This document shows, one piece after another, positions 12,661 to 42,840 of a DNA stretch of 42,840 bases. The notes under the pieces were generated by a model that saw only the letters and a program-made list of their open reading frames with translations, made no database searches and was not told where the DNA came from. Position 1 is the stretch's first letter. The number at the start of each line of letters is the position of its first letter. The stretch comes from Octopus bimaculoides (taxonomy: Eukaryota). A program made the position numbers and the translations under genes. Where the stretch lies: the NCBI RefSeq assembly GCF_001194135.2, contig NC_068996.1:17971849-18014688 (forward strand), in the 5' to 3' direction.

Positions 12661-13926
12661 CAGGGGTTGGACAAAATAATGAAAACACCTTAAAATTTCA
12701 AACAAATTTATTTTAATATGGGATAGGACCGCCTTTGGCAGTAATTACAGCTTGAAGTTCTACAAGGTATGGACTAGTACAAAGTTTGAATTGTTTCCAA
12801 AGGAATTTTTGTCCATTCTTCAGCTAAAACAGTCTCCAGTTCTTGTAGTGATGATGGTGTAAGATATCTACTCCTTACTTGTTTTTCTAAAATGCACCTT
12901 AAATGTTCAATAATATTGAGATCTGGGGACTGTGGTGGCCAGATAAGATGTTCAACTTCACAAGAATATTCCTCGTGCTATTCAGTAACAACTTTAGCTG
13001 TGTGAATTGGTGCATTATCAGCCTGAAAGATTGCGTTTCCCTTCGGAAACAGTTCTGCAACTATAGGATAAATTTGATCTGATGAAATTCTTAAATAGTC
13101 TTGACTATTAATTCTGCCATGAAGGGAAACCATTGGGCCAGCGAATTATAGTATTCCCAGATCATTACAGATCCTCCTTCATGTTTAATAGTTGGAAGAA
13201 GGCAGTCTGGGTCAAATGCTTCTTTTGGCTGTCTCCACATGTATACTCAGCTGGTGGTCGGAAGTAAGGTAAAGGATGACTCGTCCAAGAAAATAAAATT
13301 CTTCCACTACTCTAGGAACCAGTTCTTTAGGTTTTTACTCCACTCTAAATGCTTTGCGACATTTCTTTTTGAAAGTAGTGGTTTTCTGATTGCAGCCCTC
13401 CTGTGAAATCCGGCTTTGTGCAGCTCCTGGCAAACAGTTTTTGTGGAAACTGGGTTCTCGAGCTGGTCATTAATCTCTGCAGTAATTTTGGAGGCTGTAC
13501 TTTTGTGATCCTTTCTAACAATTCGCGTAAGAGTCCAACAGTCCCTAACTGAAAGTTTTGGTTTCCTTCCAGAATTTTGTTTCGATGAGGAGGTTTTTCC
13601 CTCTTTCTCAAAGGCTGTCAATACTTTCCAGACAGTACTTCTTGATACACCAAACATTTTGGCTGTTTCATTATGCTAGCACCTGCCATACAAGCACCAA
13701 CAATTTGACCGCTTTGAAAGTCCGATAGATCTGTCATTTTAATGAATTTTAATTACCTTATTTTGGTGGTATCTGAAAAGAAACAGCAATTTTCGCAAAA
13801 CATATTTAACAACACTAATAATAAATCAAAAACAATAAAAATAAACAAGCTTTTGACGGTTTTATAAATATTTCAAAATTATGATGCTATGATGCTAGGT
13901 GTTTCCATTATTTTGTCCAACCTCTG
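12661..13926 (-). mobile_element. Full-length Tc1 (DD34E-type) transposon, transposase pseudogenised (13737-12713)
   Basis: TIRs CAGGGGTTGGACAAAATAATG and CATTATTTTGTCCAACCTCTG with TA on both sides. Motifs GRKPKLS, FLDESSF, FQADNAPIH and WPPQSPDLNIIEH, with several stops. Confidence 0.95.
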
Positions 13927-17999: not shown

Positions 18000-18155
18000 N
18001 NNNNNNNNNAAAAGACAACAAAAGAAAGAAAGAGACCGTGATATTATGTAAATAGAGGAATTTATCTGTAAAAAAATGTGACAGTTATTCCGTAGCCATG
18101 ATAAAACTCTGAGTTTCGGATGCTGGGGCGGAAACCCACACCGCCATCTCTTCTA

Positions 18156-20493: not shown

Positions 20494-21182
20494 NNNNNNN
20501 NNNNNNNNNNNNNNNNNNNNNNNNNNNNNNNNNNNNNNNNNNNNNNNNNNNNNNNNNNNNNNNNNNNNNNNNNNNNNNNNNNNNNNNNNNNNNNNNNNNN
20601 NNNNNNNNNNNNNNNNNNNNNNNNNNNNNNNNNNNNNNNNNNNNNNNNNNNNNNNNNNNNNNNNNNNNNNNNNNNNNNNNNNNNNNNNNNNNNNNNNNNN
20701 NNNNNNNNNNNNNNNNNNNNNNNNNNNNNNNNNNNNNNNNNNNNNNNNNNNNNNNNNNNNNNNNNNNNNNNNNNNNNNNNNNNNNNNNNNNNNNNNNNNN
20801 NNNNNNNNNNNNNNNNNNNNNNNNNNNNNNNNNNNNNNNNNNNNNNNNNNNNNNNNNNNNNNNNNNNNNNNNNNNNNNNNNNNNNNNNNNNNNNNNNNNN
20901 NNNNNNNNNNNNNNNNNNNNNNNNNNNNNNNNNNNNNNNNNNNNNNNNNNNNNNNNNNNNNNNTTTGGTTTATTTTTATGTGTCTTGACTATACTATACT
21001 GATGAGTGAAGATTTATAATACTATAATGATCACGAAATCGGCGATCTATATTTAAGTCTGTTTTTAAAAGGCTAGCTTCTTCGAGGGTTGCATTTCCTT
21101 GCATTCGGTAAAAATGTGTTTATTACGGTAGTTAGCGTGAGGCATTCTTGTATAGTTATGCCCTTATATATGTGTGTGTGTG

Positions 21183-23990: not shown

Positions 23991-24362
23991 NNNNNNNNNN
24001 NNNNNNNNNNNNNNNNNNNNNNNNNNNNNNNNNNNNNNNNNNNNNNNNNNNNNNNNNNNNNNNNNNNNNNNNNNNNNNNNNNNNNNNNNNNNNNNNNNNN
24101 NNNNNNNNNNNNNNNNNNNNNNNNNNNNNNNNNNNNNNNNNNNNNNNNNNNNNNNNNNNNNNNNNNNNNNNNNNNNNNNNNNNNNNNNNNNNNNNNNNNN
24201 NNNNNNNNNNNNNNNNNNNNNNNNNNNNNNNNNNNNNNNNNNNNNNNNNNNNNNNNNNNNNNNNNNNNNNNNNNNNNNNNNNNNNNNNNNNNNNNNNNNN
24301 NNNNNNNNNNNNNNNNNNNNNNNNNNNNNNNNNNNNNNNNNNNNNNNNNNNNNNNNNNNNNN

Positions 24363-25030
24363 GAGGATAAAAAAGGTAAAAAAGAATTAAGAGAAGGTGA
24401 AAGGATGAAAGGAAAAATGTTCATTCATACCTGTCAGGGACACAATGCCAAGATCAAATATGAGATGTTGCTTCTTTTGTTTCCTAGAGAAGGTGGGGTC
24501 TGTGGTTAAGGCCATTCCACACACTGATAAATCTGCAATAGAATGATTCACAGTGTTGAAGTGGGTGGTGAGTGGTTCGCCTGGCATATGTAACATTATG
24601 CTTTTGATGTGTTCGCAAAAGCAACCCCCAAGGTGTCACCCTGTTTCTCCAATGTAAAGAACACCACAGAGTTTTCATATGATGCAATATATGAGATTCA
24701 CCAAAGTTCAACAGAAGTGGTGTGTTATGTGATATTGCTTCTTGGGCTCCGTGATGGTGGGAGTATTGTTGATGTATGGGCATGTGTTACATTATCGGTA
24801 AGAACATTCAAAGATTCTTGGTTGTGTGGAGCTGGGAGCTGTGAATCTTCTAACAAGGAGATTTCTAAGACTCCTATCTGTTTTAAAAGACAGGTGAGAT
24901 GGTGTGGGAAAGATAGGAGTGATTGTTGGGTCAGAAGGAAGAATGCAAAAATTGTGAGTGAGTTTGTATTTTAGAGGGAGGGTGGATGGGTGGTAGGTTA
25001 ATGAGAGTGGAATATGATATGTGAAAGTGC
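24363..25030 (-). mobile_element. Penelope-like element 3' portion: thumb/linker plus C-terminal GIY-YIG endonuclease (pseudogene)
   Basis: PLSLTYHP...SFKTDRSLRNLLVR...CNTCPYI...NLIYCI..LCGVLYIGETG...EH...HFN...H...LIFDLG...GMN, with stops. Confidence 0.9.
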
Positions 25031-25042
25031 ATGAAGACGATA

Positions 25043-25700
25043 GGAGCCCAAGAAGCAATATCACATAACACACCACTTCTGTTGAACTTTGGTGAATCTC
25101 ATATATTGCATCATATGCAAACTCTGTGGTGCTCTTTACATTGGAGAAACAGGGTGACACCTTGGGGATTGCTTTTGCGAACACATCAAAAGCATAATGT
25201 TACGTGTGCCAGGCGAACCACTCACCACCCACTTCAACACTGCGAATCATTCTATTGCAGATTTATCAGTGTGTGAAATGGCCTTGCACCACAGACCCCC
25301 ACCTTCTCTAGAAAACGAAAGGGGCAACGTCTCATATTTGATCTTGGCACTGTGTCCCTGACAGGTATGAATGAACATTTTTCCTTTCATCCTTTCACCT
25401 TCTCTTAATTCTTTTTTACCTTTTTTATCCTCCTTCCACCCTCTCTCTCTGCCACATTCCCACATTTACTTACCTCTACTTTCCTATCACCCTTTTTCTT
25501 CCTTCTTTCTGTAAGCCCTCTCTTATAACTCCTGCTTCACATTTGCAGCCCATGTTATTCTGCATCCATTATCAGTTGCAGCCAGTTTTTCAAGCTGAGA
25601 GAATGTAAAACTCTGTTTGTCTTTCTTCAACTTCCCTTCTTTCTCTACCTCCAGACGAAGGACTGCATCCCAAATGATGGATATTCTATTCCTCATGGCA
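25043..25700 (+). mobile_element. Inverted second copy of the PLE endonuclease 3' end plus 3' tail
   Basis: 25043-25432 is the reverse complement of 24363-24750 with scattered substitutions; decayed hammerhead-like motif at 25649-25682. Confidence 0.85.
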
Positions 25701-28409: not shown

Positions 28410-31015
28410 AAATACAAAGACCCTCCCTCGTGAAGAATCGACCCCCCCAGCATAGACCAGTTATTAGTGACTTTAGACTCGAGGCCAGAATGATACCAAA
28501 AAGCAGACAAATCAGGAAAAGAGGGACTTGGAAGCTTAAGAACCCTTTACATGGTCAGAGATTTAAGGATATCCTTACCGAGAAATTTGATGAATTCCTG
28601 TGAAATAGCTTGCTGAGCACCACAGACCAAATCTGTGGCTGAGGCAAAGTCTCTTCAAGACCTAGGGTAATGTGGTGGTGGAACAATACTGTAGACAGGG
28701 CCATTAGAACAAAAAAAACAGACCTGGAAGGTCTGGAAGAGTTGGGGTAGCCAGGAACTGTATCGATAGCCGGAAGGGAGTAGCAGAAAAGAAGTTATGC
28801 TCAACAACATAAGAACCAAAGAACTGAAGTATTTCAGATTGCAAGACAGTGTGTGAGAGAAAATCATGATGTCATAGGAGAGAAATGTGTCTGCATGGAT
28901 GATAGCGCACTTTCTTTTAATGATTCTGCAAAGAAAGAGACTTGGAGATGCCATTATAAAAGACTGCTGAATGTGGAGAATGAATGGAAGGAGGAGAGTT
29001 TGCCAAAAGTTAACCCAATTGTGGGACCAGCGACCCGAATCAACGGTACCCTGGTAGATAAAGCATTTAAGGATATAAGGACAGGAAAAGCTCCTGGCCT
29101 ATCAGGAATCACAGCTGAGATGCTTAAAATATTGGGCAGTGTGGTTTATGGTCTAGTCACCCACATCATAAATCAGGTGTTCATGAAGGAGTCGCACCAA
29201 ATGACTAGTGTGAGAGCACCATAGTCAACTGCTATAAAGGTGATGCTTTAGATAGAAATAACTACAAGGGTATCAAATTATTGGATCAGGTGATGAAAGG
29301 TATAAACTTCTGTACTTGGCTTTTGTTGACTTGGAAAAAGCTTTTGACAAGGTCTCCCATTCCCTTATCTTGTGGTCAATGCAGAAACTAGGGATAGATG
29401 ACTGGTTGATAAGAGCAGTACAAACTCTGTACAGGGATGTTGCCAGTAAGGTGAGGGTTGGTAACAAGTATAGCGAAGAATTCCGGGTAGAAGTAGGGGT
29501 TCACCAATGATCAGTCCTCAGCTCCCTTATTCATCATAGTTCTCCAAGCAATAACAGGGGAATTTAAGACAGGCTGCCCCTGGGAGTTCCTCTATGCTGA
29601 TGACCTTGCTCCAAAAGCCGTGCCACTACCAGAACTAGAGACAAAGTTTAGGGTATGGAAACAAGGTCTAGAATCGAAGGGCCTTAGAGTCAACCTAGCA
29701 AAAACCAAAATCCTAGTAAGTAGGAAGGCAGACAAATCACAAACCCCCTTAGGTAGATGGCCCTGCTCAATCTGTAGAAAAGGGCATGGGTAGAAACACT
29801 ATAAGGTATACTCGGTGTAAGTTATGGACACAAGAGATGCAGCAATATCAAAGGAAGGCTAACTGGGAAGATAGTTTTTGTGTGTGGCAAATGCTCAGGA
29901 GCAATAAACACCAAAGGTGTACAAAAAACAGATTCCATCAAATGCTAGGGGGAAAAAACTAGAAGTAGTTGATAGCTTCTGCTACCTAGGCAACCAAGTC
30001 TGTAGTGGGAGTGGATGCTCTGAAAGCATAGATGCTAGAATAAGAATAACCTGGGTGAAATTCAGAAAGCTCCAGCCTCTGCTAGCAACTAAGATCCTCT
30101 TGCTCAGGGTGAAATGTAGACTGTAGGATGCATGTGTGCAAATTGCCATGCTACATGACAGTGAAAAATGGGCTGTGACTCTTGAGGACAAGTGTAGACT
30201 TGAAAGAAATGAAGCTAGTATGCTCTGCTGGATGTGCAATGTCAGTGTGCATACATGACAGAGTGTAAGCACTCTGAGAGAAAAATTGTACTTAAGAAGC
30301 ATCAGATGTGGCATGCAAGAGAGATAATTGCACTGGTATGGTCATGTATTATGTATGGATGAGGACAGCTGTGTGAGGAAGTGCCACACTCTAACAGTGG
30401 AAGGAACCTGTGGAAGAGGTAGATCCAGGAAGACATGGGATGAGGTGGTGAAGCATGACCTTCGAATGTCGGGCTTCACAGAGGCAATGAAAAGAGACCG
30501 AGACCTTTGGAGATATGCTGTGATTGAAAAGACCCAGCAATTAAAGTGAGATCATAGCCATGGCAGATGCCAGTGTTGCATAATTGGCCATCTTAAAAGT
30601 ACCCTTGAAGTATTGAGTGATATGATATGCTTGAGAAGACCTGTCAAGTCAAGTAAAATTGAAATCGTAGCCATGGACAGTGCCACCTTGACTGGCTCCC
30701 ATGCTCGTGGCACATAAAATGCACCATCCAAATGTGGTCGATGCCAGTGCCCCCTGACCAGTTCCTGTGCCGGTGGCACATAAAAAACACCATCCGAACA
30801 TGGTAGATGCCAGTGCTCTCTGACCAGCTCTTGTGCCGGTGGCACATAAAAAGCACCCATTACACTCTCAGAGTGGTTGGCGTTAGGAAGGGCATCCAGC
30901 TGTAGAAACATTGTCAGATCAGATTGGAGCCTGGTGCAGCCGACTAACTTGCCAGACCTCAGTCAAACCGTCCAACCTATGCCAGCATGGAAAGCGGATA
31001 TTAAACAATGATGAT
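28410..31015 (+). mobile_element. 5'-truncated RTE-clade LINE: decayed RT, C-terminus and 3' tail
   Basis: GKAPGLSGITAEMLK, AFVDLEKAFDKV, GVHQ*SVLS, FLYADDL, EVVDSFCYLG, HWYGHV; tail ends in ATGATGAT. Confidence 0.95.
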
Positions 31016-34530: not shown

Positions 34531-34699
34531 TAATTCGTATAATTTTTTACTCTTTCTTCAGCTTCTCAATTCTTTATTCCTTTTCTTTTGATAAGGGGTA
34601 TCACCCTATAACTCAGATTAACTTCTGTTTCTTCCTTCAACATATGAAGATTCATTGCTTACACTCTGTCATGTATGCACACTGACATTACACATCCAG

Positions 34700-35335
34700 C
34701 AGATCATACTAGCTTAATTTCTTTCAAGCCTACACATGTCCTCAGCAGCCATGGCCCATGTTTCACTGTGATGTAGCATGGCTGTTCGCACACACACATC
34801 ATACAGTCTACATTTCACTCTGAGCGAGAGGCCCTTTGTTATCAGCAGAGGTAGGAGTTCTCCGAACTTTGCCCAGACTATTCTTATTCTAGTTGCTATG
34901 CTCTCAGAGCAAACACCCCTTCTACTGACTTGGTCACGTACGTAACAGAAGCTATCAACTACTTCTAGATTTTCCCCCCACCATGTGATGGAATCTGTTT
35001 TCTGCACATTTTCAGTGTTTATTGCTCCTGAGCATTTGCCACACACAAAAACTATCTTCTGAGTTAACCTCCCTTTGATATTACTGCACCTCTTAATGTA
35101 TTCATAGCTTACACTGGGTGCATCTTAGTGAGTTTCTACCTATGCCTTTTCTACAGAATGAACAGGGCCATCTACCTGAAGGGATTTGTGATTTGTCTGC
35201 CTTCCTGCTTACTAAAACTTTTCGCTTTTGCTAGATTGACTCTAAAGTCATTCGATTCTAAACCTTGCTTCTGCAACTGAAACTTCTCCTCTAGTTCTGG
35301 TAGTGACTCAGCTATTAGAGCAAGGTCCCAGGGGC
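34700..35335 (-). mobile_element. RTE RT C-terminal fragment
   Basis: LEVVDSFCYV, SLRVKCRLYDVCVRTAMLH and PWDLALIAESLPELE; same family as 28410-31015. Confidence 0.9.
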
Positions 35336-35550
35336 ACATCCACCTTACATGTTGGCATGCGTGGGTGTATGAATATGTCCATATATGCATGGGTATATAC
35401 AGATGTGTTTGTATAAGGTATACACACATGTGCATATCTCAACCCCTGCTTAGTGTCTTGAATATTAAAATATCTTGATTCAAACATCCTACAAATAATT
35501 GCGCTTGTGTGTGTGTGTGCACGACGTGCATGCGTGCATGTGTGTGTTTA

Positions 35551-35594
<44 letters not shown>

Positions 35595-35820
35595 CATACA
35601 CATACACATACATAAATAAATAAAAGACCATAGTTATTCATTTCAGCCATGCTGTCTAAATGTTAAATGCTGCCACCTTGTTTCTTTAGTGTCCTGCATA
35701 TATATATATATATATTGTTAGATAAGATACAGAAATAAATTTATTTCTCAAATGCGTGATAATGCTAATAAATAGCATGATCAGGATAAATTATCCAAAT
35801 AATGCAGAAAAATACGTTAC

Positions 35821-35893
35821 TGGCCAGCCATGAGACTCGAACTCACATCTCTGTGATTACGCGTCAAGTGTTTTACCATTAAACTAAACTGCC
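35821..35893 (-). tRNA. tRNA-like cloverleaf, anticodon position CGT, G33; probably non-translational
   Basis: GGCAGTT-TA-GTTT-AATGGTA-AAAC-A-CTTGA-CGCGTAA-TCACA-GAGAT-GTGAG-TTCGAGT-CTCAT-GGCTGGC; A and B boxes present, T5 8 nt downstream; weak anticodon stem. Confidence 0.5.
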
Positions 35894-36120
35894 CAGCAAC
35901 GAATTCTTCTGCAATTTTAGAACTTATAAATTTAGCTTCATAAGACGCTAACGTTAAATTCAACTTTACAATGAAAGTAAACAAACAAAGTTTGTTCTTT
36001 TTTAGAAGCTTCGAGATGTATTGTAAGATACAGAAATAAATTTATTTCTTAAATGCGTGATAATGCTATAAATAGCGAGATCAGGATAAATTATCCAAAT
36101 AATGCAGAAAAATACGTTAC

Positions 36121-36188
36121 TGGCCAGCCATGAGACTCAAACTCACAACTCTGTGATTACTCGTCAAGTGTTTTACCATTAAACTAAA
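36121..36188 (-). pseudogene. 5'-truncated tRNA-like copy (AGT at anticodon position)
   Basis: Second unit of the left array, cut at the inversion junction. Confidence 0.6.
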
Positions 36189-36376
36189 ATTGATCTCGCT
36201 ATTTATAGCATTATCACGCGTTTGAAAAATAAATTTATTTCTGTATCTTACAATACATCTCAACGCTTCTAAAAAAGAACAAACTTAGTTTACTTTCATC
36301 GTAAAGTTGAATTTAACGTTAGCGTCTTATGAAGCTAAATTTATAAGTTCTAAAATTGCAGAAGAATTCATTACTG

Positions 36377-36449
36377 GACAGTTTAGCTTAATGGTAAAGC
36401 AAGTGACGCGTAATCACAGAGATGTGAGTTCAAGTCTCATGGCTGGCCA
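36377..36449 (+). tRNA. tRNA-like cloverleaf, anticodon position CGT, G33
   Basis: GACAGTT-TA-GCTT-AATGGTA-AAGC-A-AGTGA-CGCGTAA-TCACA-GAGAT-GTGAG-TTCAAGT-CTCAT-GGCTGGC; TTTTT at 36458-36462. Confidence 0.5.
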
Positions 36450-36960
36450 ATAACGTATTTTTCTGCATTATTTGGATAATTTGTCCTGATTGCTATTTAT
36501 AGCATTATCACGCGTTTGAGAAATAAATTTATTTCTGTATCTTACAATACATCTCAACGCTTCTAAAAAAGAACAAACTTTGTTTGTTTACTTTCATCGT
36601 AAAGTTGAATATTGTTAGATGTTTGTCCATTTCATTATAGAATTTTTGATTTTAGAAGTTTTAGGTTTTAGATTGTTGAATGTCTTATCTAGCCTCCTCC
36701 ATCACTATGTTTCTGCCATACAGCTTGGTTGTTTCCCCCAATAAATATCATTTTGTTTACCTTACTTAACTCACATTGGATTGCCTAGACATCAAATATC
36801 TATCATGAATGGGAAAATGTTCAGATAAACCAAATTTTCATTTTTTCCTTGCTTTTTTAATCAGTGTCATAGTATTCATTTCACCTATGCTTTCTTAATG
36901 TTAAGTGCTGCCACCTCACTTCTTTAATGTTTTGAATATATATATATATATATATATATT

Positions 36961-37180
36961 GCTAAAGGCAGCGAGCTGGCAGAAACATTAGCATGCTAGG
37001 TGAAATGCTTAGCAATATTTCATCTGTCTTTACATTCTGAGTTCAAATTCCACAGAGGTCAACTTTGCCTTTCATCTTTTCAGGGTCAATAAATTAAATA
37101 CCAGTTGCATACTGGGATCAATCTAATCAACTAGCCCCCTCCCCAAGAATTTCGGGCCTTGTGCCTAGAGTAGAAAAGAA
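36961..37180 (+). mobile_element. Nin-domain tRNA SINE inserted at a (TA)n tract
   Basis: GGCAGCGAGCTGGCAGAA head, GAGTTCAAATTC B-box, CTTTGCCTTTCATC domain; AATATATATATT-like sequence on both sides. Confidence 0.85.
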
Positions 37181-37799
37181 TATATATATTGTCAGACTTT
37201 TGTTAGATGCTTGTTTCATTTTAGAAGTTACATATTTTTTTAGCTCATTGACTATCTTATCTGGCCTTTTTTATCACAATATTTTTGCCATGCAGCTTGG
37301 TCATTCATAGTACACCCTCCCATCCCATCCTCACCACCTATATTAAAAGTCTTTCTTTTATACTGGAAACCTGTATGGAAAGCTCTCTTCTCCACTTCAC
37401 TAACATCAGCAGCGATGACAGTACTACAATATAAAAATGGCATAGCTAGCTTGCTTGCATCAGAAATATGACAAGTGACTAGTATACTGGCCAATAGGTT
37501 AATTATCAGCACTATTTTATTTATCTTATCTTTGTATAAGCAATGGTGTATACTACATCCTCTTCTGGTAGATGTGCAAATTGTGAAGTGAATGTATGAT
37601 GGTAAATTAAATGCAGGATAACTTATATGAATTTATATGAGATGTCTGGCAAATGTCTTGCAAACCTTTTCAGATGCAAAATGTTATTCTCCTCATGCCC
37701 CTCTTCCCTCTTGCCACCCCTTCCTACCCCTAGAGTTGGCACACTCAATATAGGTACATTGGAAGGTAGGTCTGGTAAAACTGTTGAGATGCTAGAATG

Positions 37800-39260
37800 A
37801 AGGCTGTAAATGTGTGTTGTGGTCAATAAGTAAGGCAGAGAGGGCTTTTACCAGGTTCCTCACAAGCAAAGAACATAGGTATAAAATCTTCTGGGTGGAC
37901 AATTGTAATAGGGCTGGTGGTGTGAGCATACTTCTTGCTAAGAAATGGGTTAAGGGGATCAAGGTTGACAGAATGTGTGATAAGAGACTTAAGCTTAGAC
38001 TAGTTTTGTAAAGTGGAATAGCAACTATCATTTCTGCATACACTCCTCAACTGGGGCTGCCAGATAAATAGAAAGATTGATTTTATGACACTCATTTACA
38101 GACAAACTCTTTGACAATTAACAGTGACCTTCTCTTTGTGGCCAGTGAATTCAATGACTGCCAAAACTAGAGAAGAAATTTCAGGTGTGGAAGCAAGGCC
38201 TGGAATCAAAGGGCCTTAGAGTTAACTTAGCAAAGACCAAAGTCTTAGTAAGTACAAAAATGGACAATCACTAATTCGTTCGGGGAGATGGCCCTGTTTG
38301 ATATGTAGAAAAGTGTAGCAATGGGCACATAAGTGGTACAGTGGTATCACAAGAAGATTAACAGAAAAAGTAGTCTTTGTGAGTAGCAGATGCACAGGTA
38401 CAATAAACACCAGGAATATACTGAAAATACACTCTCTCAAATGTCCAAGAGGATCCTTAGAAACAGAAAATAGTTTCTGTTACCTAAGTGATTGAGTTAG
38501 CAGTGGAGGAGAAAGCTCTAAAAGCATAGTTACGAGAATAAGAATGGGCTAGGTGATTAGGCGGCGAGCTGGCAGAAACGTTAGCACACTGGGCAAAATG
38601 CTTAGTGGTATTTCGTCTGCCACTACATTCTGAGTTCAAATTCTGCCGAGGTTGACTTTGCCTTTCATCCTTTCGGGGTCGATAAATTAAGTACCAGTTA
38701 CGCACTGGGGTCAATGTAATCGACTTAATCCCTTGTTTGTCCCCCTCTATATTTAGCTCCTTGTGGGCAGTAAAGAAATAAGAATGGGCTAGGTGAAGTT
38801 CAGAGAGCTTCTACTGTTGTAGGTAACAGAGAGAAAGACCAATTGTATGATACATGTGTATAAACAGCTATGCTACATGGCAGTGAAACATGGGCTGTGC
38901 CTACTAAGAACATACAAAAGCTTGAAAGAAATGAAGCCATCATGCTTCTCTGGATGGATAATATCAGTCTGCATATGGGACAGAGTGTAAATAATTTTAG
39001 AGAAAAACTGGGCATGCACGGCATCAGATGTAGTGTGCAAGAGAGAGACTGCACTGGTATGGTCACATGATGTGTATAGATGAAGACAGCTGCATAAAGA
39101 AGAGCTGATCACAAACTGTGGAGGAAACATGTGGAAGGAGTAGACCCAGATGTGGGATGAAATAATGATAAGTGATCTTCAGAGGCTGAGCCTCACAGAA
39201 GAGATGACAAGGGACTGAAGCTTTTAGTGATTTGTTGTGCTTGAGAAGAGATGTTAAGCT
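37800..39260 (+). mobile_element. Heavily deleted RTE LINE (endonuclease and RT pieces) interrupted by a SINE
   Basis: RAGGVSILLAKKW, GLRVNLAKTKVL, MLHGSETW and LHWYGH motifs. Confidence 0.85.
38557..38776 (+). mobile_element. Young Nin-domain SINE with 20-bp TSD
   Basis: AATAAGAATGGGCTAGGTGA at 38537-38556 and 38777-38796; intact A/B boxes and CpGs. Confidence 0.92.
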
Positions 39261-42062: not shown

Positions 42063-42493
42063 TTGAAAACACGGTCCTCATCTTAGTTATTTCATTGTTC
42101 ACCACCTGAAAATAAACATCACTCCCTGATGAGATCCGGATATAACTGGGGTCATTTTACATCTAACATCACTTAAATGTTGATGATCAAAAATCAATGG
42201 CTGGATTGGAACATATGTAGAATTCTTTTATGTTTATTTCTTTTGTTGATTCACTTCTTTTACATTCTGAATCTTTTATGTATTATTATTTTTCATCGTG
42301 ATACAAATAAAATTAACCAAGTATCCACTATATTTCTTCTCTATTTTCTTTTATTAATTTTACAAAATATTGGACAGTTTATCCATATATATTGCAGAAC
42401 TTCCTTTCAATATATTTGATAACACACTATTTGATATCCGGATTTTTATAAAAAATCCCTTATGAGGAAATTACATCCTCAATATTTGCATAT

Positions 42494-42840
42494 CAGTCTG
42501 TGGAGCGAATGTCGCTAGTAACTACAGGATTTCCTACTTCCTCTCAATGATCATACGCCCCATAATCCAGATGTCACCTGATGTTTGTGACAGCACGGAA
42601 GATCTCCTCAGCAGGATCAATGACTGCAACAACACTTGCAACCTGACAGGGTGTATAGTGGGTAGCATGGATGTGGTATCACTATACCCATCTATCGACG
42701 TGGATTTTGCAGTGGAAAAGTGCGTGGAGATGATCAACGAGAGCGAAGTAGAGTTCCAAAAAGTCAACACAGAAGAACTGGGCCTCCTACTTAGATTGAC
42801 ATATGACGATGTATATCTAGATAGATACGACCTTAGAGAT
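42494..42840 (+). mobile_element. Penelope-like reverse transcriptase, probably Naiad-type; 5'-truncated, runs off window
   Basis: Stop-free frame VCGANVASNYRISYFLSMIIRP...CDSTEDLL...IVGSMDVVSLYPSIDVDFAVEKC...VNTEELGLLLRL; the (S)xDVxxLYPSI motif is diagnostic of PLE RT motif A. Absent from the ORF track because there is no stop in the window. Confidence 0.85.

What the first reader, a model, noticed from the sequence alone, without database searches (positions are those of the whole stretch)
35712..36620. tRNA-like tandem repeat that appears to have been mobilised as one inverted, TSD-flanked insertion
Seen: a ~301-bp unit containing a full-length cloverleaf with A box, B box and a T5 terminator. 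It is arranged as two arrays diverging from a junction at ~36190, and ATATTGTTAGAT is duplicated at both outer ends (9-12 bp allowing for microhomology). Known: head-to-head inversion plus a TSD is the signature of twin-primed target-primed reverse transcription, and Penelope-like elements also make tandem/inverted inserts. Inference: a multimeric read-through RNA of a tRNA-like unit was retro-inserted, implying a mobile, protein-free tRNA-satellite family unlike the ordinary SINEs here, which have no tandem units. A transcript across it would form a ~355-bp stem (35724-36083 with 36191-36543), a possible ADAR or Dicer substrate.
Basis: partly seen in the sequence, partly recalled or inferred. 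Interest (0 to 1): 0.8.

Follow-up and report, generated by a model that had tools for sequence, protein, structure and literature searches.

The report
Retro-inserted inverted tRNA-like repeat block
An 885-bp block made of about three copies of a 300-bp repeat carrying a degenerate tRNA-like gene was pasted in one event, as two head-to-head halves with a 12-bp target duplication, beside a TA microsatellite in what looks like an octopus genome. Reverse transcription primed from both cut DNA strands is the most likely cause, but whether it belongs to a mobile family could not be tested.

Summary
Window 35724-36608 is an 885-bp insert flanked by an exact 12-bp direct repeat, ATATTGTTAGAT. The left arm (35724-36188) carries the unit on the minus strand and the right arm (36191-36610) on the plus strand. 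Each arm holds about 1.5 units of a 294-301-bp repeat, and the units' 5' ends meet at 36189-36190. Each unit has a degenerate tRNA-like cloverleaf with A and B boxes and a T5 run.

New evidence favours a single insertion made by an endonuclease and target priming:
- An older paralogous flank copy 1.2 kb downstream carries an ordinary SINE whose target duplication ends within 1 nt of the same position.
- The duplicated 12-mer matches the unit 10/12 exactly where the left arm ends.
- The right arm is not a mirror copy of the left.
- CpG is undepleted in the insert (1.25) against 0.24 in the flanks.
- A Penelope-like endonuclease remnant in the same window has the same head-to-head layout.

Against this reading: there is no poly(A) or defined 3' end, every unit has a Pol III terminator, and no hammerhead was found.

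No other copy lies in the window, and two of the three public collections searched, the two checked with a control, lack this host. The claim of a mobile tRNA-satellite family therefore stays untested. Interest is moderate.

The parts
35696..35716 (.). (TA)n microsatellite immediately upstream of, and running into, the target site
   Evidence: Read directly. The left edge of the duplicated target lies in this run.
35712..35723 (+). Left copy of the 12-bp target-site duplication ATATTGTTAGAT
   Evidence: The paralogous flank copy B has (TA)n-TTGTCAGAC at the same place, so this sequence is native to the flank.
35724..36188 (-). Left arm: about 1.5 units with the tRNA-like sense on the minus strand (L1 35724-35779, L2 35780-36079, L3 36080-36188). 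The outer end is unit position 53 and the inner end is unit position 185.
   Evidence: blastn and repeat finder; monomer alignment.
35822..35893 (-). Full-length tRNA-like cloverleaf of L2, followed on its strand by a T5 run at 35808-35812
   Evidence: Rfam tRNA 34.3 bits against a gathering score of 29; T5 run read.
36130..36186 (-). 5'-truncated tRNA-like copy of L3, cut at the central junction, with a T5 run at 36108-36112
   Evidence: Rfam tRNA 24.8 bits, model positions 8-63.
36189..36190 (.). Central head-to-head junction: 2-nt filler AT with no microhomology
   Evidence: Boundaries come from homology to neighbouring units.
36191..36610 (+). Right arm: about 1.4 units (R1 36191-36491, R2 36492-36610). 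The inner end is unit position about 288 and the outer end is unit position 115. The last 2 nt overlap the target duplication.
36377..36448 (+). Full-length tRNA-like cloverleaf of R1 (A box 36384-36394, B-box region 36426-36437), with a T5 run at 36458-36462
   Evidence: Rfam tRNA 38.6 bits; ARAGORN Thr(CGT) at 36376-36449; pair counts.
36609..36620 (+). Right copy of the 12-bp target-site duplication
36868..37301 (+). Paralogous copy B of the flank (85% identity on the left side, about 71% on the right). It carries a cephalopod-type tRNA-SINE at about 36967-37182, with its own target duplication at 36950-36966 and 37180-37196 (14/17 identical). It serves as an imperfect 'empty site' and shows that the same spot was used twice.

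Best explanation
The block is a single, fairly recent insertion made by target-primed reverse transcription, in which both nicked DNA strands served as primers. This could be twin priming on one long RNA or 'dual priming' on two RNAs. It is also the tandem plus head-to-head architecture that Penelope-like elements (PLEs) produce.

The template was RNA from a tandemly repeated unit of about 300 bp. That unit looks like a tRNA (pseudo)gene duplicated together with its flanks.

Proposed steps:
1. An element-encoded endonuclease nicked the bottom strand inside the (TA)n run, and the top strand 12 nt downstream, after TTGTTAGAT.
2. One 3' end primed the cDNA that became the right arm.
3. The top-strand end ...TATTGTTAGAT-3', which is 10/12 complementary to the unit RNA at that point, primed the cDNA that became the inverted left arm.
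4. The two cDNA ends were joined with a 2-nt filler, and gap repair produced the 12-bp duplication.

Shown here: the structure, the duplication, the foreign origin of the insert, the re-used site, and that the arms are not mirror copies. Inferred: the RNA intermediate, which enzyme acted (PLE or LINE), and any activity of the copy.

At this locus the insert is probably inert. Its three tRNA-like units keep Pol III boxes and terminators, so each could still give an RNA of about 85-90 nt. A read-through transcript would fold into a hairpin with a stem of about 355 bp.
For: 1. The exact 12-bp duplication bounds the whole composite. The chance of 9 nt or more is about 2.5e-4.
2. Both arms have their 5' ends at the centre and their 3' ends against the duplication. 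This is the layout described for twin and dual priming (PMC2837659) and for PLE insertions, which form partial tandems plus an inverted 5'-truncated copy (PMC8557442).
3. In the older paralogous flank copy, an ordinary SINE has a target duplication that starts in the same (TA)n run. It ends after TTGTCAGA, within 1 nt of the end of this insert's duplication. For a uniform choice over the roughly 350-bp paralogous unit, that is about 1 in 100. It points to a preferred nick site.
4. SINE target duplications in the window are 17-20 bp and about 17 bp, the same variable class as 12 bp.
5. The 12-mer matches the unit (GTATTGTAAGAT, 36018-36029) 10/12 exactly at the homologue of the left-arm terminus, P about 1.3e-3. 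This is expected if the top-strand overhang annealed to the template.
6. In unit positions 185-293 there are 7 sites where L2 = L3 but R1 differs, 3 sites unique to L3, and none unique to L2. R1 is therefore not a fold-back copy of L2 (p about 0.008). Within-arm identity is 95-97.5% and between-arm identity 91-97%.
7. CpG observed/expected is 1.25 in the insert, against a window median and flank value of 0.24. The sequence is foreign to the locus and not old.
8. The insertion abuts (TA)n, a preferred target of some PLE clades. PLEs and several LINE clades are reported as recently active in Octopus vulgaris (PMC13282606).
9. A GIY-YIG endonuclease remnant with a CX4CxxC motif forms the same head-to-head structure at 24363-25432.
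Against: - There is no poly(A), microsatellite tail or any recognisable common 3' end. The two outer ends fall at arbitrary unit positions, 53 and 115.
- Each unit contains a T5 Pol III terminator, so a multi-unit RNA needs Pol II read-through or leaky termination.
- No hammerhead or other ribozyme was found at E up to 10, and there is no similarity to any LINE, PLE or SINE in the window. No partner element is identified.
- The 10/12 target-unit complementarity is offset by 5 nt from the actual junction, where only 1 nt of microhomology exists. That offset is unexplained.
- The paralogous 'empty site' can also be aligned so that two TTGTYAGAY motifs (8/12 alike) pre-exist there (and my reading). 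It is therefore supportive, not decisive.
- This is a single locus in a gapped assembly that looks short-read-based.
Confidence: 0.5

Rival explanations
1. DNA-level capture. One or two fragments of a tRNA-like tandem array were copied or ligated into a staggered break at the fragile (TA)n site, with no RNA intermediate. The fragments could have come from extrachromosomal circles or from microhomology-mediated template switching during break repair.
For: - The ends fall at arbitrary unit positions and there is no poly(A).
- The junctions show 1-2 nt of microhomology or a 2-nt filler, as in end joining.
- The 10/12 similarity between target and unit fits microhomology-mediated repair equally well.
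- T5 terminators inside each unit argue against a Pol III multimer RNA.
- Dispersed short satellite arrays with abrupt junctions are well known in molluscs (PMC5139131).
Against: - End-joining insertions usually give target deletions, not a clean 12-bp duplication.
- A SINE, which certainly arrived by target-primed reverse transcription, used the same nick positions in the paralogous copy.
- The head-to-head orientation is only one of four possible arrangements for two captured fragments.
- A fold-back or snap-back origin is disfavoured by the 7:0 asymmetry of variants.
Confidence: 0.22
2. Assembly artefact. The insert is real but its internal arrangement (the inversion, the number of units) is a mis-join or collapse of near-identical 300-bp repeats in a scaffolded assembly that looks short-read-based.
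For: - The window has three N gaps: 18000-18009, 20494-20963 and 23991-24362.
- The other long inverted repeat in the window abuts one of these gaps.
- Tandem/inverted inserts are known to cause problems in short-read assemblies (PMC8557442).
Against: - The arms differ at 5-9% of sites and carry arm-specific variants. A hairpin-type assembly artefact would give identical arms.
- There are no Ns within 35400-36900.
- Both outer junctions lead into unique flank sequence and carry a matching duplication.
Confidence: 0.1
3. Two-step local history. A direct array, or a single unit, was inserted and later amplified and partly inverted in place.
For: Within-arm units are more alike than between-arm units, as local homogenisation would produce.
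Against: - Re-inverting the left arm does not restore a continuous array. Unit position 53 would abut position 288, so 234 nt would be missing.
- An in-place inversion would need one breakpoint exactly at the boundary between insert and duplication.
Confidence: 0.07
4. A foldback-type or long-TIR DNA transposon (FB-like or Mutator-like) whose inverted arms are built of tandem subrepeats, inserted with a 9-11-bp duplication.
For: It has long inverted arms made of tandem units, and a duplication of 9-12 bp.
Against: - The two termini are not inverted copies of each other. The outer ends are at unit positions 53 and 115, and 67 nt at the right end have no partner.
- There is no transposase gene nearby and no second copy in the window.
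Confidence: 0.03

Closest known systems
Twin-primed or dual-primed LINE-1 insertions (5'-inverted retrocopies)
   Same: A target-site duplication bounds two oppositely oriented pieces of the same kind of template. The 5' ends meet at an internal junction that has little or no microhomology. The top-strand overhang is complementary to the template near the inverted piece (PMC2837659).
   Different: There is no poly(A) tail and no TTTT/A target. The template is a tandem repeat, so the usual small deletion or duplication at the junction cannot be read. The host is a cephalopod, where several non-L1 reverse transcriptases are active.
Penelope-like element (PLE) insertions and their non-autonomous derivatives (animal 'non-LTR retrozymes')
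   Same: Both show partial tandem copies plus an inverted 5'-truncated copy head-to-head, a variable duplication and a microsatellite target, with (TA)n preferred by some clades. They are small tandem non-coding units without an ORF (PMC8557442; bioRxiv 10.64898/2026.07.22.740005).
   Different: No hammerhead ribozyme, no similarity to the PLE remnant in the window, and no 30-40-bp 'tail'. The unit carries a tRNA-like Pol III gene instead.
Dispersed short satellite-DNA arrays and SINE-derived satellites of molluscs
   Same: A short array of a few monomers with abrupt junctions in unrelated DNA (PMC5139131). A SINE origin has been suggested for one mollusc satellite, PcH-Sat from a Nin-SINE (title of PMC11121367 as listed; the paper itself was not read).
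   Different: Here the array is split into two inverted halves and has a clean 12-bp target duplication. The unit keeps a terminator directly after the tRNA-like part, unlike a SINE.
Tandem arrays of tRNA genes or Pol III units (for example Xenopus and zebrafish tRNA arrays, Xenopus satellite 1; recalled from memory, not tested)
   Same: A repeat unit consisting of a Pol III gene with A and B boxes, its terminator and a spacer.
   Different: Those are long chromosomal arrays. This is a 1.5 + 1.4-unit fragment inserted elsewhere, and the tRNA-like part is degenerate.

Membership tests
Twin-primed TPRT insertion (L1 type) | A target-site duplication flanks the whole composite | tested here: met
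   12/12 identical at 35712-35723 and 36609-36620; the chance of 9 nt or more is about 2.5e-4.
Twin-primed TPRT insertion (L1 type) | Two template segments lie in opposite orientation, with 5' ends at the internal junction and 3' ends outward | tested here: met
   The inner ends are unit positions 185 and about 288. The outer ends are unit positions 53 and 115.
Twin-primed TPRT insertion (L1 type) | A 3' poly(A) lies next to the downstream duplication, and the target is TTTT/A | tested here: not met
   The right end is ...GTAAAGTTGAAT and the left end (reverse complement) is ...CTGTATCTTA. The target is (TA)n-TTGTTAGAT.
Twin-primed TPRT insertion (L1 type) | The top-strand overhang is complementary to the template at the internal priming site | tested here: inconclusive
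   There is a 10/12 match at the homologue of the left-arm terminus (P about 1.3e-3). It is offset by 5 nt, and only 1 nt matches at the exact junction.
PLE-type insertion / PLE-dependent non-autonomous element (non-LTR retrozyme) | Partial tandem copies plus an adjacent inverted 5'-truncated copy | tested here: met
   The feature is described in PMC8557442.
PLE-type insertion / PLE-dependent non-autonomous element (non-LTR retrozyme) | A hammerhead ribozyme in each unit (defining for retrozymes; absent in Naiad PLEs) | tested here: not met
   An Rfam scan of 35600-36750 at E up to 10 found only tRNA and noise hits.
PLE-type insertion / PLE-dependent non-autonomous element (non-LTR retrozyme) | Sequence shared with the pseudo-LTR or 3' end of an autonomous PLE | tested here: inconclusive
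   No similarity to the only PLE remnant in the window or to anything else in it. The genome itself could not be searched.
PLE-type insertion / PLE-dependent non-autonomous element (non-LTR retrozyme) | Many dispersed copies with a microsatellite target bias | not testable with these tools
   This one copy abuts (TA)n. The collections hold no host DNA: the SINE control gave 0 hits.
tRNA-derived SINE | A tRNA-related head with A and B boxes | tested here: met
   Rfam tRNA 38.6 and 34.3 bits; the boxes were read.
tRNA-derived SINE | The head continues into the body without a Pol III terminator, and the 3' tail is LINE-derived or A-rich | tested here: not met
   A T5 run lies 9 nt after the tRNA-like 3' end in all three copies. 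There is no tail.
Satellite / tandem tRNA-pseudogene array | Head-to-tail monomers | tested here: met
   Unit boundaries are crossed three times: L1|L2, L2|L3 and R1|R2. TRF reports no array because each arm holds fewer than 2 copies.
Satellite / tandem tRNA-pseudogene array | Long source arrays exist elsewhere in the genome | not testable with these tools
   Searches found no match. Controls show that two of the three collections lack the host; the metagenome collection had no control.
Foldback / long-TIR DNA transposon | Inverted repeats reach both termini, and the termini are identical | tested here: not met
   The outer ends are at unit positions 53 and 115. Positions 36544-36610 have no partner.
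Functional tRNA-Thr(CGU) gene | A fully paired cloverleaf | tested here: not met
   Pair 2:71 is never paired and the anticodon stem has 3-4 bp. Overall 87.9% of cells are paired, against 35-48% in the slid controls. One compensatory D-stem change is present.

The most novel reading that the evidence does not exclude
The 300-bp unit is a non-autonomous retroelement of a new type. It would be a hammerhead-less counterpart of animal retrozymes, in which a tRNA-like module supplies transcription and/or processing (Pol III boxes; RNase P/Z cleavage into unit-length RNA). It would be copied by Penelope-like or microsatellite-targeting LINE reverse transcriptases into (TA)n sites as tandem plus head-to-head multimers.
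Probability: 0.12. Interest if true: 0.75.

Novelty: new variant of a known kind. Interest (0 to 1): 0.42.

Why it matters
If the reading is right, retroelement machinery in a cephalopod can pick up transcripts of a tRNA-like tandem repeat and paste them elsewhere as ready-made inverted repeats. That would be a concrete route by which satellite-like DNA spreads. It would also create long perfect hairpins de novo, which are potential sources of double-stranded RNA in animals known for heavy RNA editing.

It would also give a clean, datable example of the poorly understood tandem/inverted insertion mode shared by twin priming and Penelope-like elements. Here both nick sites are pinned down, and an independent SINE re-used one of them to within 1 nt.

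If this is a one-off retrocopy or a repair product, it is an ordinary structural curiosity.

Tried and rejected
- Hammerhead or other ribozyme in the unit: Rfam at E up to 10 on both strands found none. Retrozyme membership is rejected.
- Other copies in the window: blastn with word size 7 found none outside the locus.
- Other copies in public collections: 32-mer and 26-mer patterns gave 0 hits in the metagenome, viral and bacterial/archaeal genome collections. A control with the host's abundant SINE also gave 0 in the genome and viral collections, so those negatives say nothing.
- A spurious 55-aa ORF inside the unit, used as a handle to reach other copies through the protein database: no hits.
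- Look-up of a 146-aa window ORF, to find the source record or other assemblies: not on record.
- Full-text search for the SINE sequence, to confirm the organism: no paper. The octopus assignment rests on my memory of the cephalopod SINE and is not tool-verified.
- Pfam on the PLE-like peptide of the window: no hit. Its two database homologues do hit GIY-YIG, one of them above the curated cut-off.
- RNAalifold on the three tRNA-like copies did not return a cloverleaf. The cloverleaf was therefore tested by pair counting instead.
- Fold-back (mirror-copy) origin of the right arm: rejected by the 7:0 variant asymmetry.
- Simple post-insertion inversion: rejected because the re-inverted arm is not contiguous.
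- Helitron or MITE with an internal array: no flanking modules. The array abuts the duplication directly.
Full report
WHAT IS THERE

The window is eukaryotic, at 27-43% G+C per 2-kb window. It has (TG)n and (TA)n microsatellites, three N gaps and many transposon remnants. From memory, the SINE copies at 36967-37182 and 38559-38778 look like the abundant tRNA-derived SINE of octopuses. I could not confirm the organism with any tool.

An exact 12-mer, ATATTGTTAGAT, sits at 35712-35723 and again at 36609-36620. Between the two copies lie 885 bp made of one repeat unit of 294-301 bp.
- Minus strand: L1 35723-35776 (unit positions 1-53), L2 35780-36076 (1-293), L3 36080-36188 (185-293).
- Junction: two filler bases, AT, at 36189-36190.
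- Plus strand: R1 36191-36491 and R2 36492-36610 (1-115).

Each arm therefore holds only about 1.5 units, which is why Tandem Repeats Finder reports nothing here. Unit boundaries are nevertheless crossed three times.

Each unit carries a tRNA-like element. Rfam scores are 38.6, 34.3 and, for the truncated copy, 24.8 bits against a gathering score of 29. ARAGORN calls only one copy, as Thr(CGT). The A box is TAGCTTAATGG, and there is a B-box-like GAGTTCAAGTC. A T5 run lies 9 nt after the 3' end in all three copies.

The cloverleaf is real but degenerate. 87.9% of cells pair, against 35-48% when partners are slid. There is one compensatory D-stem change (C:G to U:A). Acceptor pair 2:71 is never paired and the anticodon stem has only 3-4 bp. 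RNAalifold does not recover the cloverleaf.

No hammerhead or other ribozyme is present at E up to 10.

An RNA across the block folds into the predicted stem of about 355 bp, with a 107-nt loop (L3) and a 67-nt unpaired 3' extension. The energy is -547.7 kcal/mol, z = -61.

IS THE DUPLICATION REAL, AND IS THIS ONE INSERTION?

In 200,000 random placements with the same 2-nt slack, a flanking repeat of 9 nt or more occurred at about 2.5e-4. A 12-mer occurred only when the real locus was sampled.

The flank is itself an old local duplication. Copy A is 35629-35723 plus 36609 to about 36740. Copy B is 36868-36966 plus 37197-37301. The two are 85% identical on the left and about 71% on the right. 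Copy B has (TA)n-TTGTCAGAC-TTTTGT where copy A, with the insert and one repeat copy removed, has (TA)n-TTGTTAGAT-GTTTGT. So the 12-mer is native flank sequence, present once.

This paralogous 'empty site' is not decisive. B can also be aligned so that two TTGTYAGAY motifs (8/12 alike) stand next to each other.

CpG observed/expected is 1.25 in the insert. The window median and the flanks are at 0.24. The block therefore has a different mutational history from its surroundings and is not old, which fits the identical duplication copies.

A later inversion of a direct array is unlikely. Re-inverting the left arm would place unit position 53 next to position 288. It would also need a breakpoint exactly at the edge of the duplication.

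HOW WAS IT MADE?

Five observations point to endonuclease nicks and priming from both strands.

First, the geometry. Both arms have their 5' ends at the centre and their 3' ends against the duplicated target. This is what twin priming, or dual priming with two RNAs, produces (PMC2837659). Penelope-like elements (PLEs) routinely leave the same thing: partial tandems plus an inverted 5'-truncated copy (PMC8557442).

Second, the paralogous copy B carries an ordinary SINE.
- Its target duplication is ATATATATATTGCTAAA / ATATATATATTGTCAGA, 14/17 identical, so it is older.
- It begins in the same (TA)n run.
- It ends after TTGTCAGA, within 1 nt of where this insert's duplication ends after TTGTTAGAT.
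- Two independent events using the same top-strand position in a roughly 350-bp paralogous unit is about a 1-in-100 coincidence. This suggests a preferred nick site.

Third, the 12-mer matches the unit (GTATTGTAAGAT, 36018-36029) at 10 of 12 positions, exactly at the homologue of the left-arm terminus. The chance is about 1.3e-3 for that 25-nt context, and about 5% anywhere in an arm. This is expected if the top-strand 3' overhang annealed to the template. The register is off by 5 nt, however, and only 1 nt of microhomology remains at the actual junction. I cannot explain that.

Fourth, the right arm is not a mirror copy of the left.
- In unit positions 185-293 there are 7 sites where L2 = L3 and R1 differs, 3 sites unique to L3, and none unique to L2 (p about 0.008 under a fold-back origin).
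- CACGCA in L1 and L2 versus CACGCG in R1 and R2 is a further arm-specific variant.
- Within-arm identities are 95-97.5% and between-arm identities 91-97%.

The arms therefore come from two different stretches of a heterogeneous array, or from two RNAs.

Fifth, the context. The window holds a second head-to-head inverted repeat, 24363-24750 against 25043-25432, 96-97% identical and abutting an N gap.
- Its arms encode, pointing outward, a peptide with CX4CxxC followed by LIY...YIGETG.
- Pfam misses the peptide itself.
- Its only two database relatives hit GIY-YIG, one at 24.5 bits against a cut-off of 22.6.
- This motif set is described for endonucleases of Neptune-type PLEs.

PLEs and the RTE, Dong-R4, CR1 and L1-Tx1 LINE clades are reported as recently active in Octopus vulgaris (PMC13282606). 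Some PLE clades prefer (TA)n targets.

WHAT SPEAKS AGAINST AN RNA INTERMEDIATE?

- There is no poly(A) or other tail. The two outer ends fall at arbitrary unit positions.
- Every unit has a Pol III terminator, so a multi-unit RNA cannot be a normal Pol III product. The same feature shows that the unit is not a conventional SINE. It looks like a tRNA (pseudo)gene duplicated with its flanks at the DNA level.
- No partner element shares sequence with the unit in the window.
- A DNA-level capture of array fragments at a staggered break in the fragile (TA)n tract therefore remains a serious rival. Dispersed short satellite arrays with abrupt junctions are common in molluscs (PMC5139131).
- Mis-assembly of the interior cannot be excluded in a gapped assembly that looks short-read-based. 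The 5-9% divergence between the arms does argue against a hairpin artefact.

WHAT COULD NOT BE TESTED?

The key claim, a mobile family, needs a genome-wide survey.
- The unit has no second copy in the 42.8-kb window.
- It has no match in the metagenome, viral or bacterial/archaeal genome collections.
- The host's own abundant SINE is also absent from the two collections I could control.
- Protein-based routes to other assemblies failed.

VERDICT

I put about 0.5 on target-primed reverse transcription, about 0.22 on DNA capture, about 0.1 on mis-assembly, and about 0.1 together on the two minor rivals. The rest is unassigned.

It fails the membership tests for retrozyme (no hammerhead), SINE (internal terminator, no tail), L1-type twin priming (no poly(A), no TTTT/A target) and foldback transposon (unequal termini). 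It works most like a PLE-type or dual-primed retro-insertion.

As a single locus it is a new variant of a known kind, of moderate interest. It would become interesting if a genome-wide survey showed a family.

Noticed in passing
window 24363-25432: A second long head-to-head inverted repeat: arms 24363-24750 and 25043-25432, 96-97% identical, with a 292-nt spacer that belongs to the longer, minus-strand copy. Each arm encodes, pointing outward, a CX4CxxC + GIY...YIG endonuclease C-terminus, probably a Neptune-type Penelope-like element remnant. The left arm runs into the N gap at 23991-24362, so its outer end and any target duplication are unknown.
   Followed up: partly
window 35629-35723 + 36609-36740 versus 36868-36966 + 37197-37301: The flank is an old local duplication with a period of 1238 bp as it now stands. 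Both copies received an insertion at the same (TA)n-TTGTYAGAY spot: the tRNA-like block in copy A and an ordinary SINE in copy B.
   Followed up: yes
window 35724-36608 and 1350-2950: CpG observed/expected is 1.25 in the insert, against a window median of 0.24. The only other undepleted stretch is an AT-rich, non-repetitive region at about 1350-2950 (observed/expected 1.2-1.34, G+C about 29-30%), of unknown nature.
   Followed up: partly
window 36018-36029 versus 35712-35723: The duplicated target 12-mer is 10/12 identical to the unit sequence at the homologue of the left-arm terminus, but shifted by 5 nt relative to the real junction (TTAGAT|AAGAT). The shift is unexplained.
   Followed up: partly
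window 35731-35748, 36032-36049, 36523-36540 (one mismatch at 36228-36245): Every unit contains the perfect 18-nt palindrome AGAAATAAATTTATTTCT, preceded by a second small palindrome, GCTATTTATAGC. The left arm ends 5-6 nt beyond the large palindrome.
   Followed up: no
window 36387/36400 versus 35883/35870: The D-stem pair C11:G24 in R1 is U11:A24 in L2 and L3. This is a compensatory double change, a weak hint that the tRNA-like fold was under constraint in the source repeat.
   Followed up: partly
window 18000-18009, 20494-20963, 23991-24362: Three runs of N, so the window comes from a scaffolded, gapped assembly.
   Followed up: no
window 38540-38796: A well-preserved SINE copy at 38559-38778 with a perfect 17-20-bp target duplication, (AAT)AAGAATGGGCTAGGTGA, and 3 extra bases (TTA) at its 5' end.
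   Followed up: partly
window 13310-13675 (-), 28784-29790 (+), 34656-35327 (-), 42466-42840 (+): Other transposon remnants. There is a Tc1-type transposase HTH (Pfam HTH_Tnp_Tc3_2, 1.5e-15). LINE reverse-transcriptase fragments (weak RVT_1 hits) have an 83%-identical inverted partial copy 0.4 kb upstream of the finding. An open frame at the window's end contains 'DVVSLYPSI', which resembles a reverse-transcriptase motif but has no Pfam hit.
   Followed up: partly
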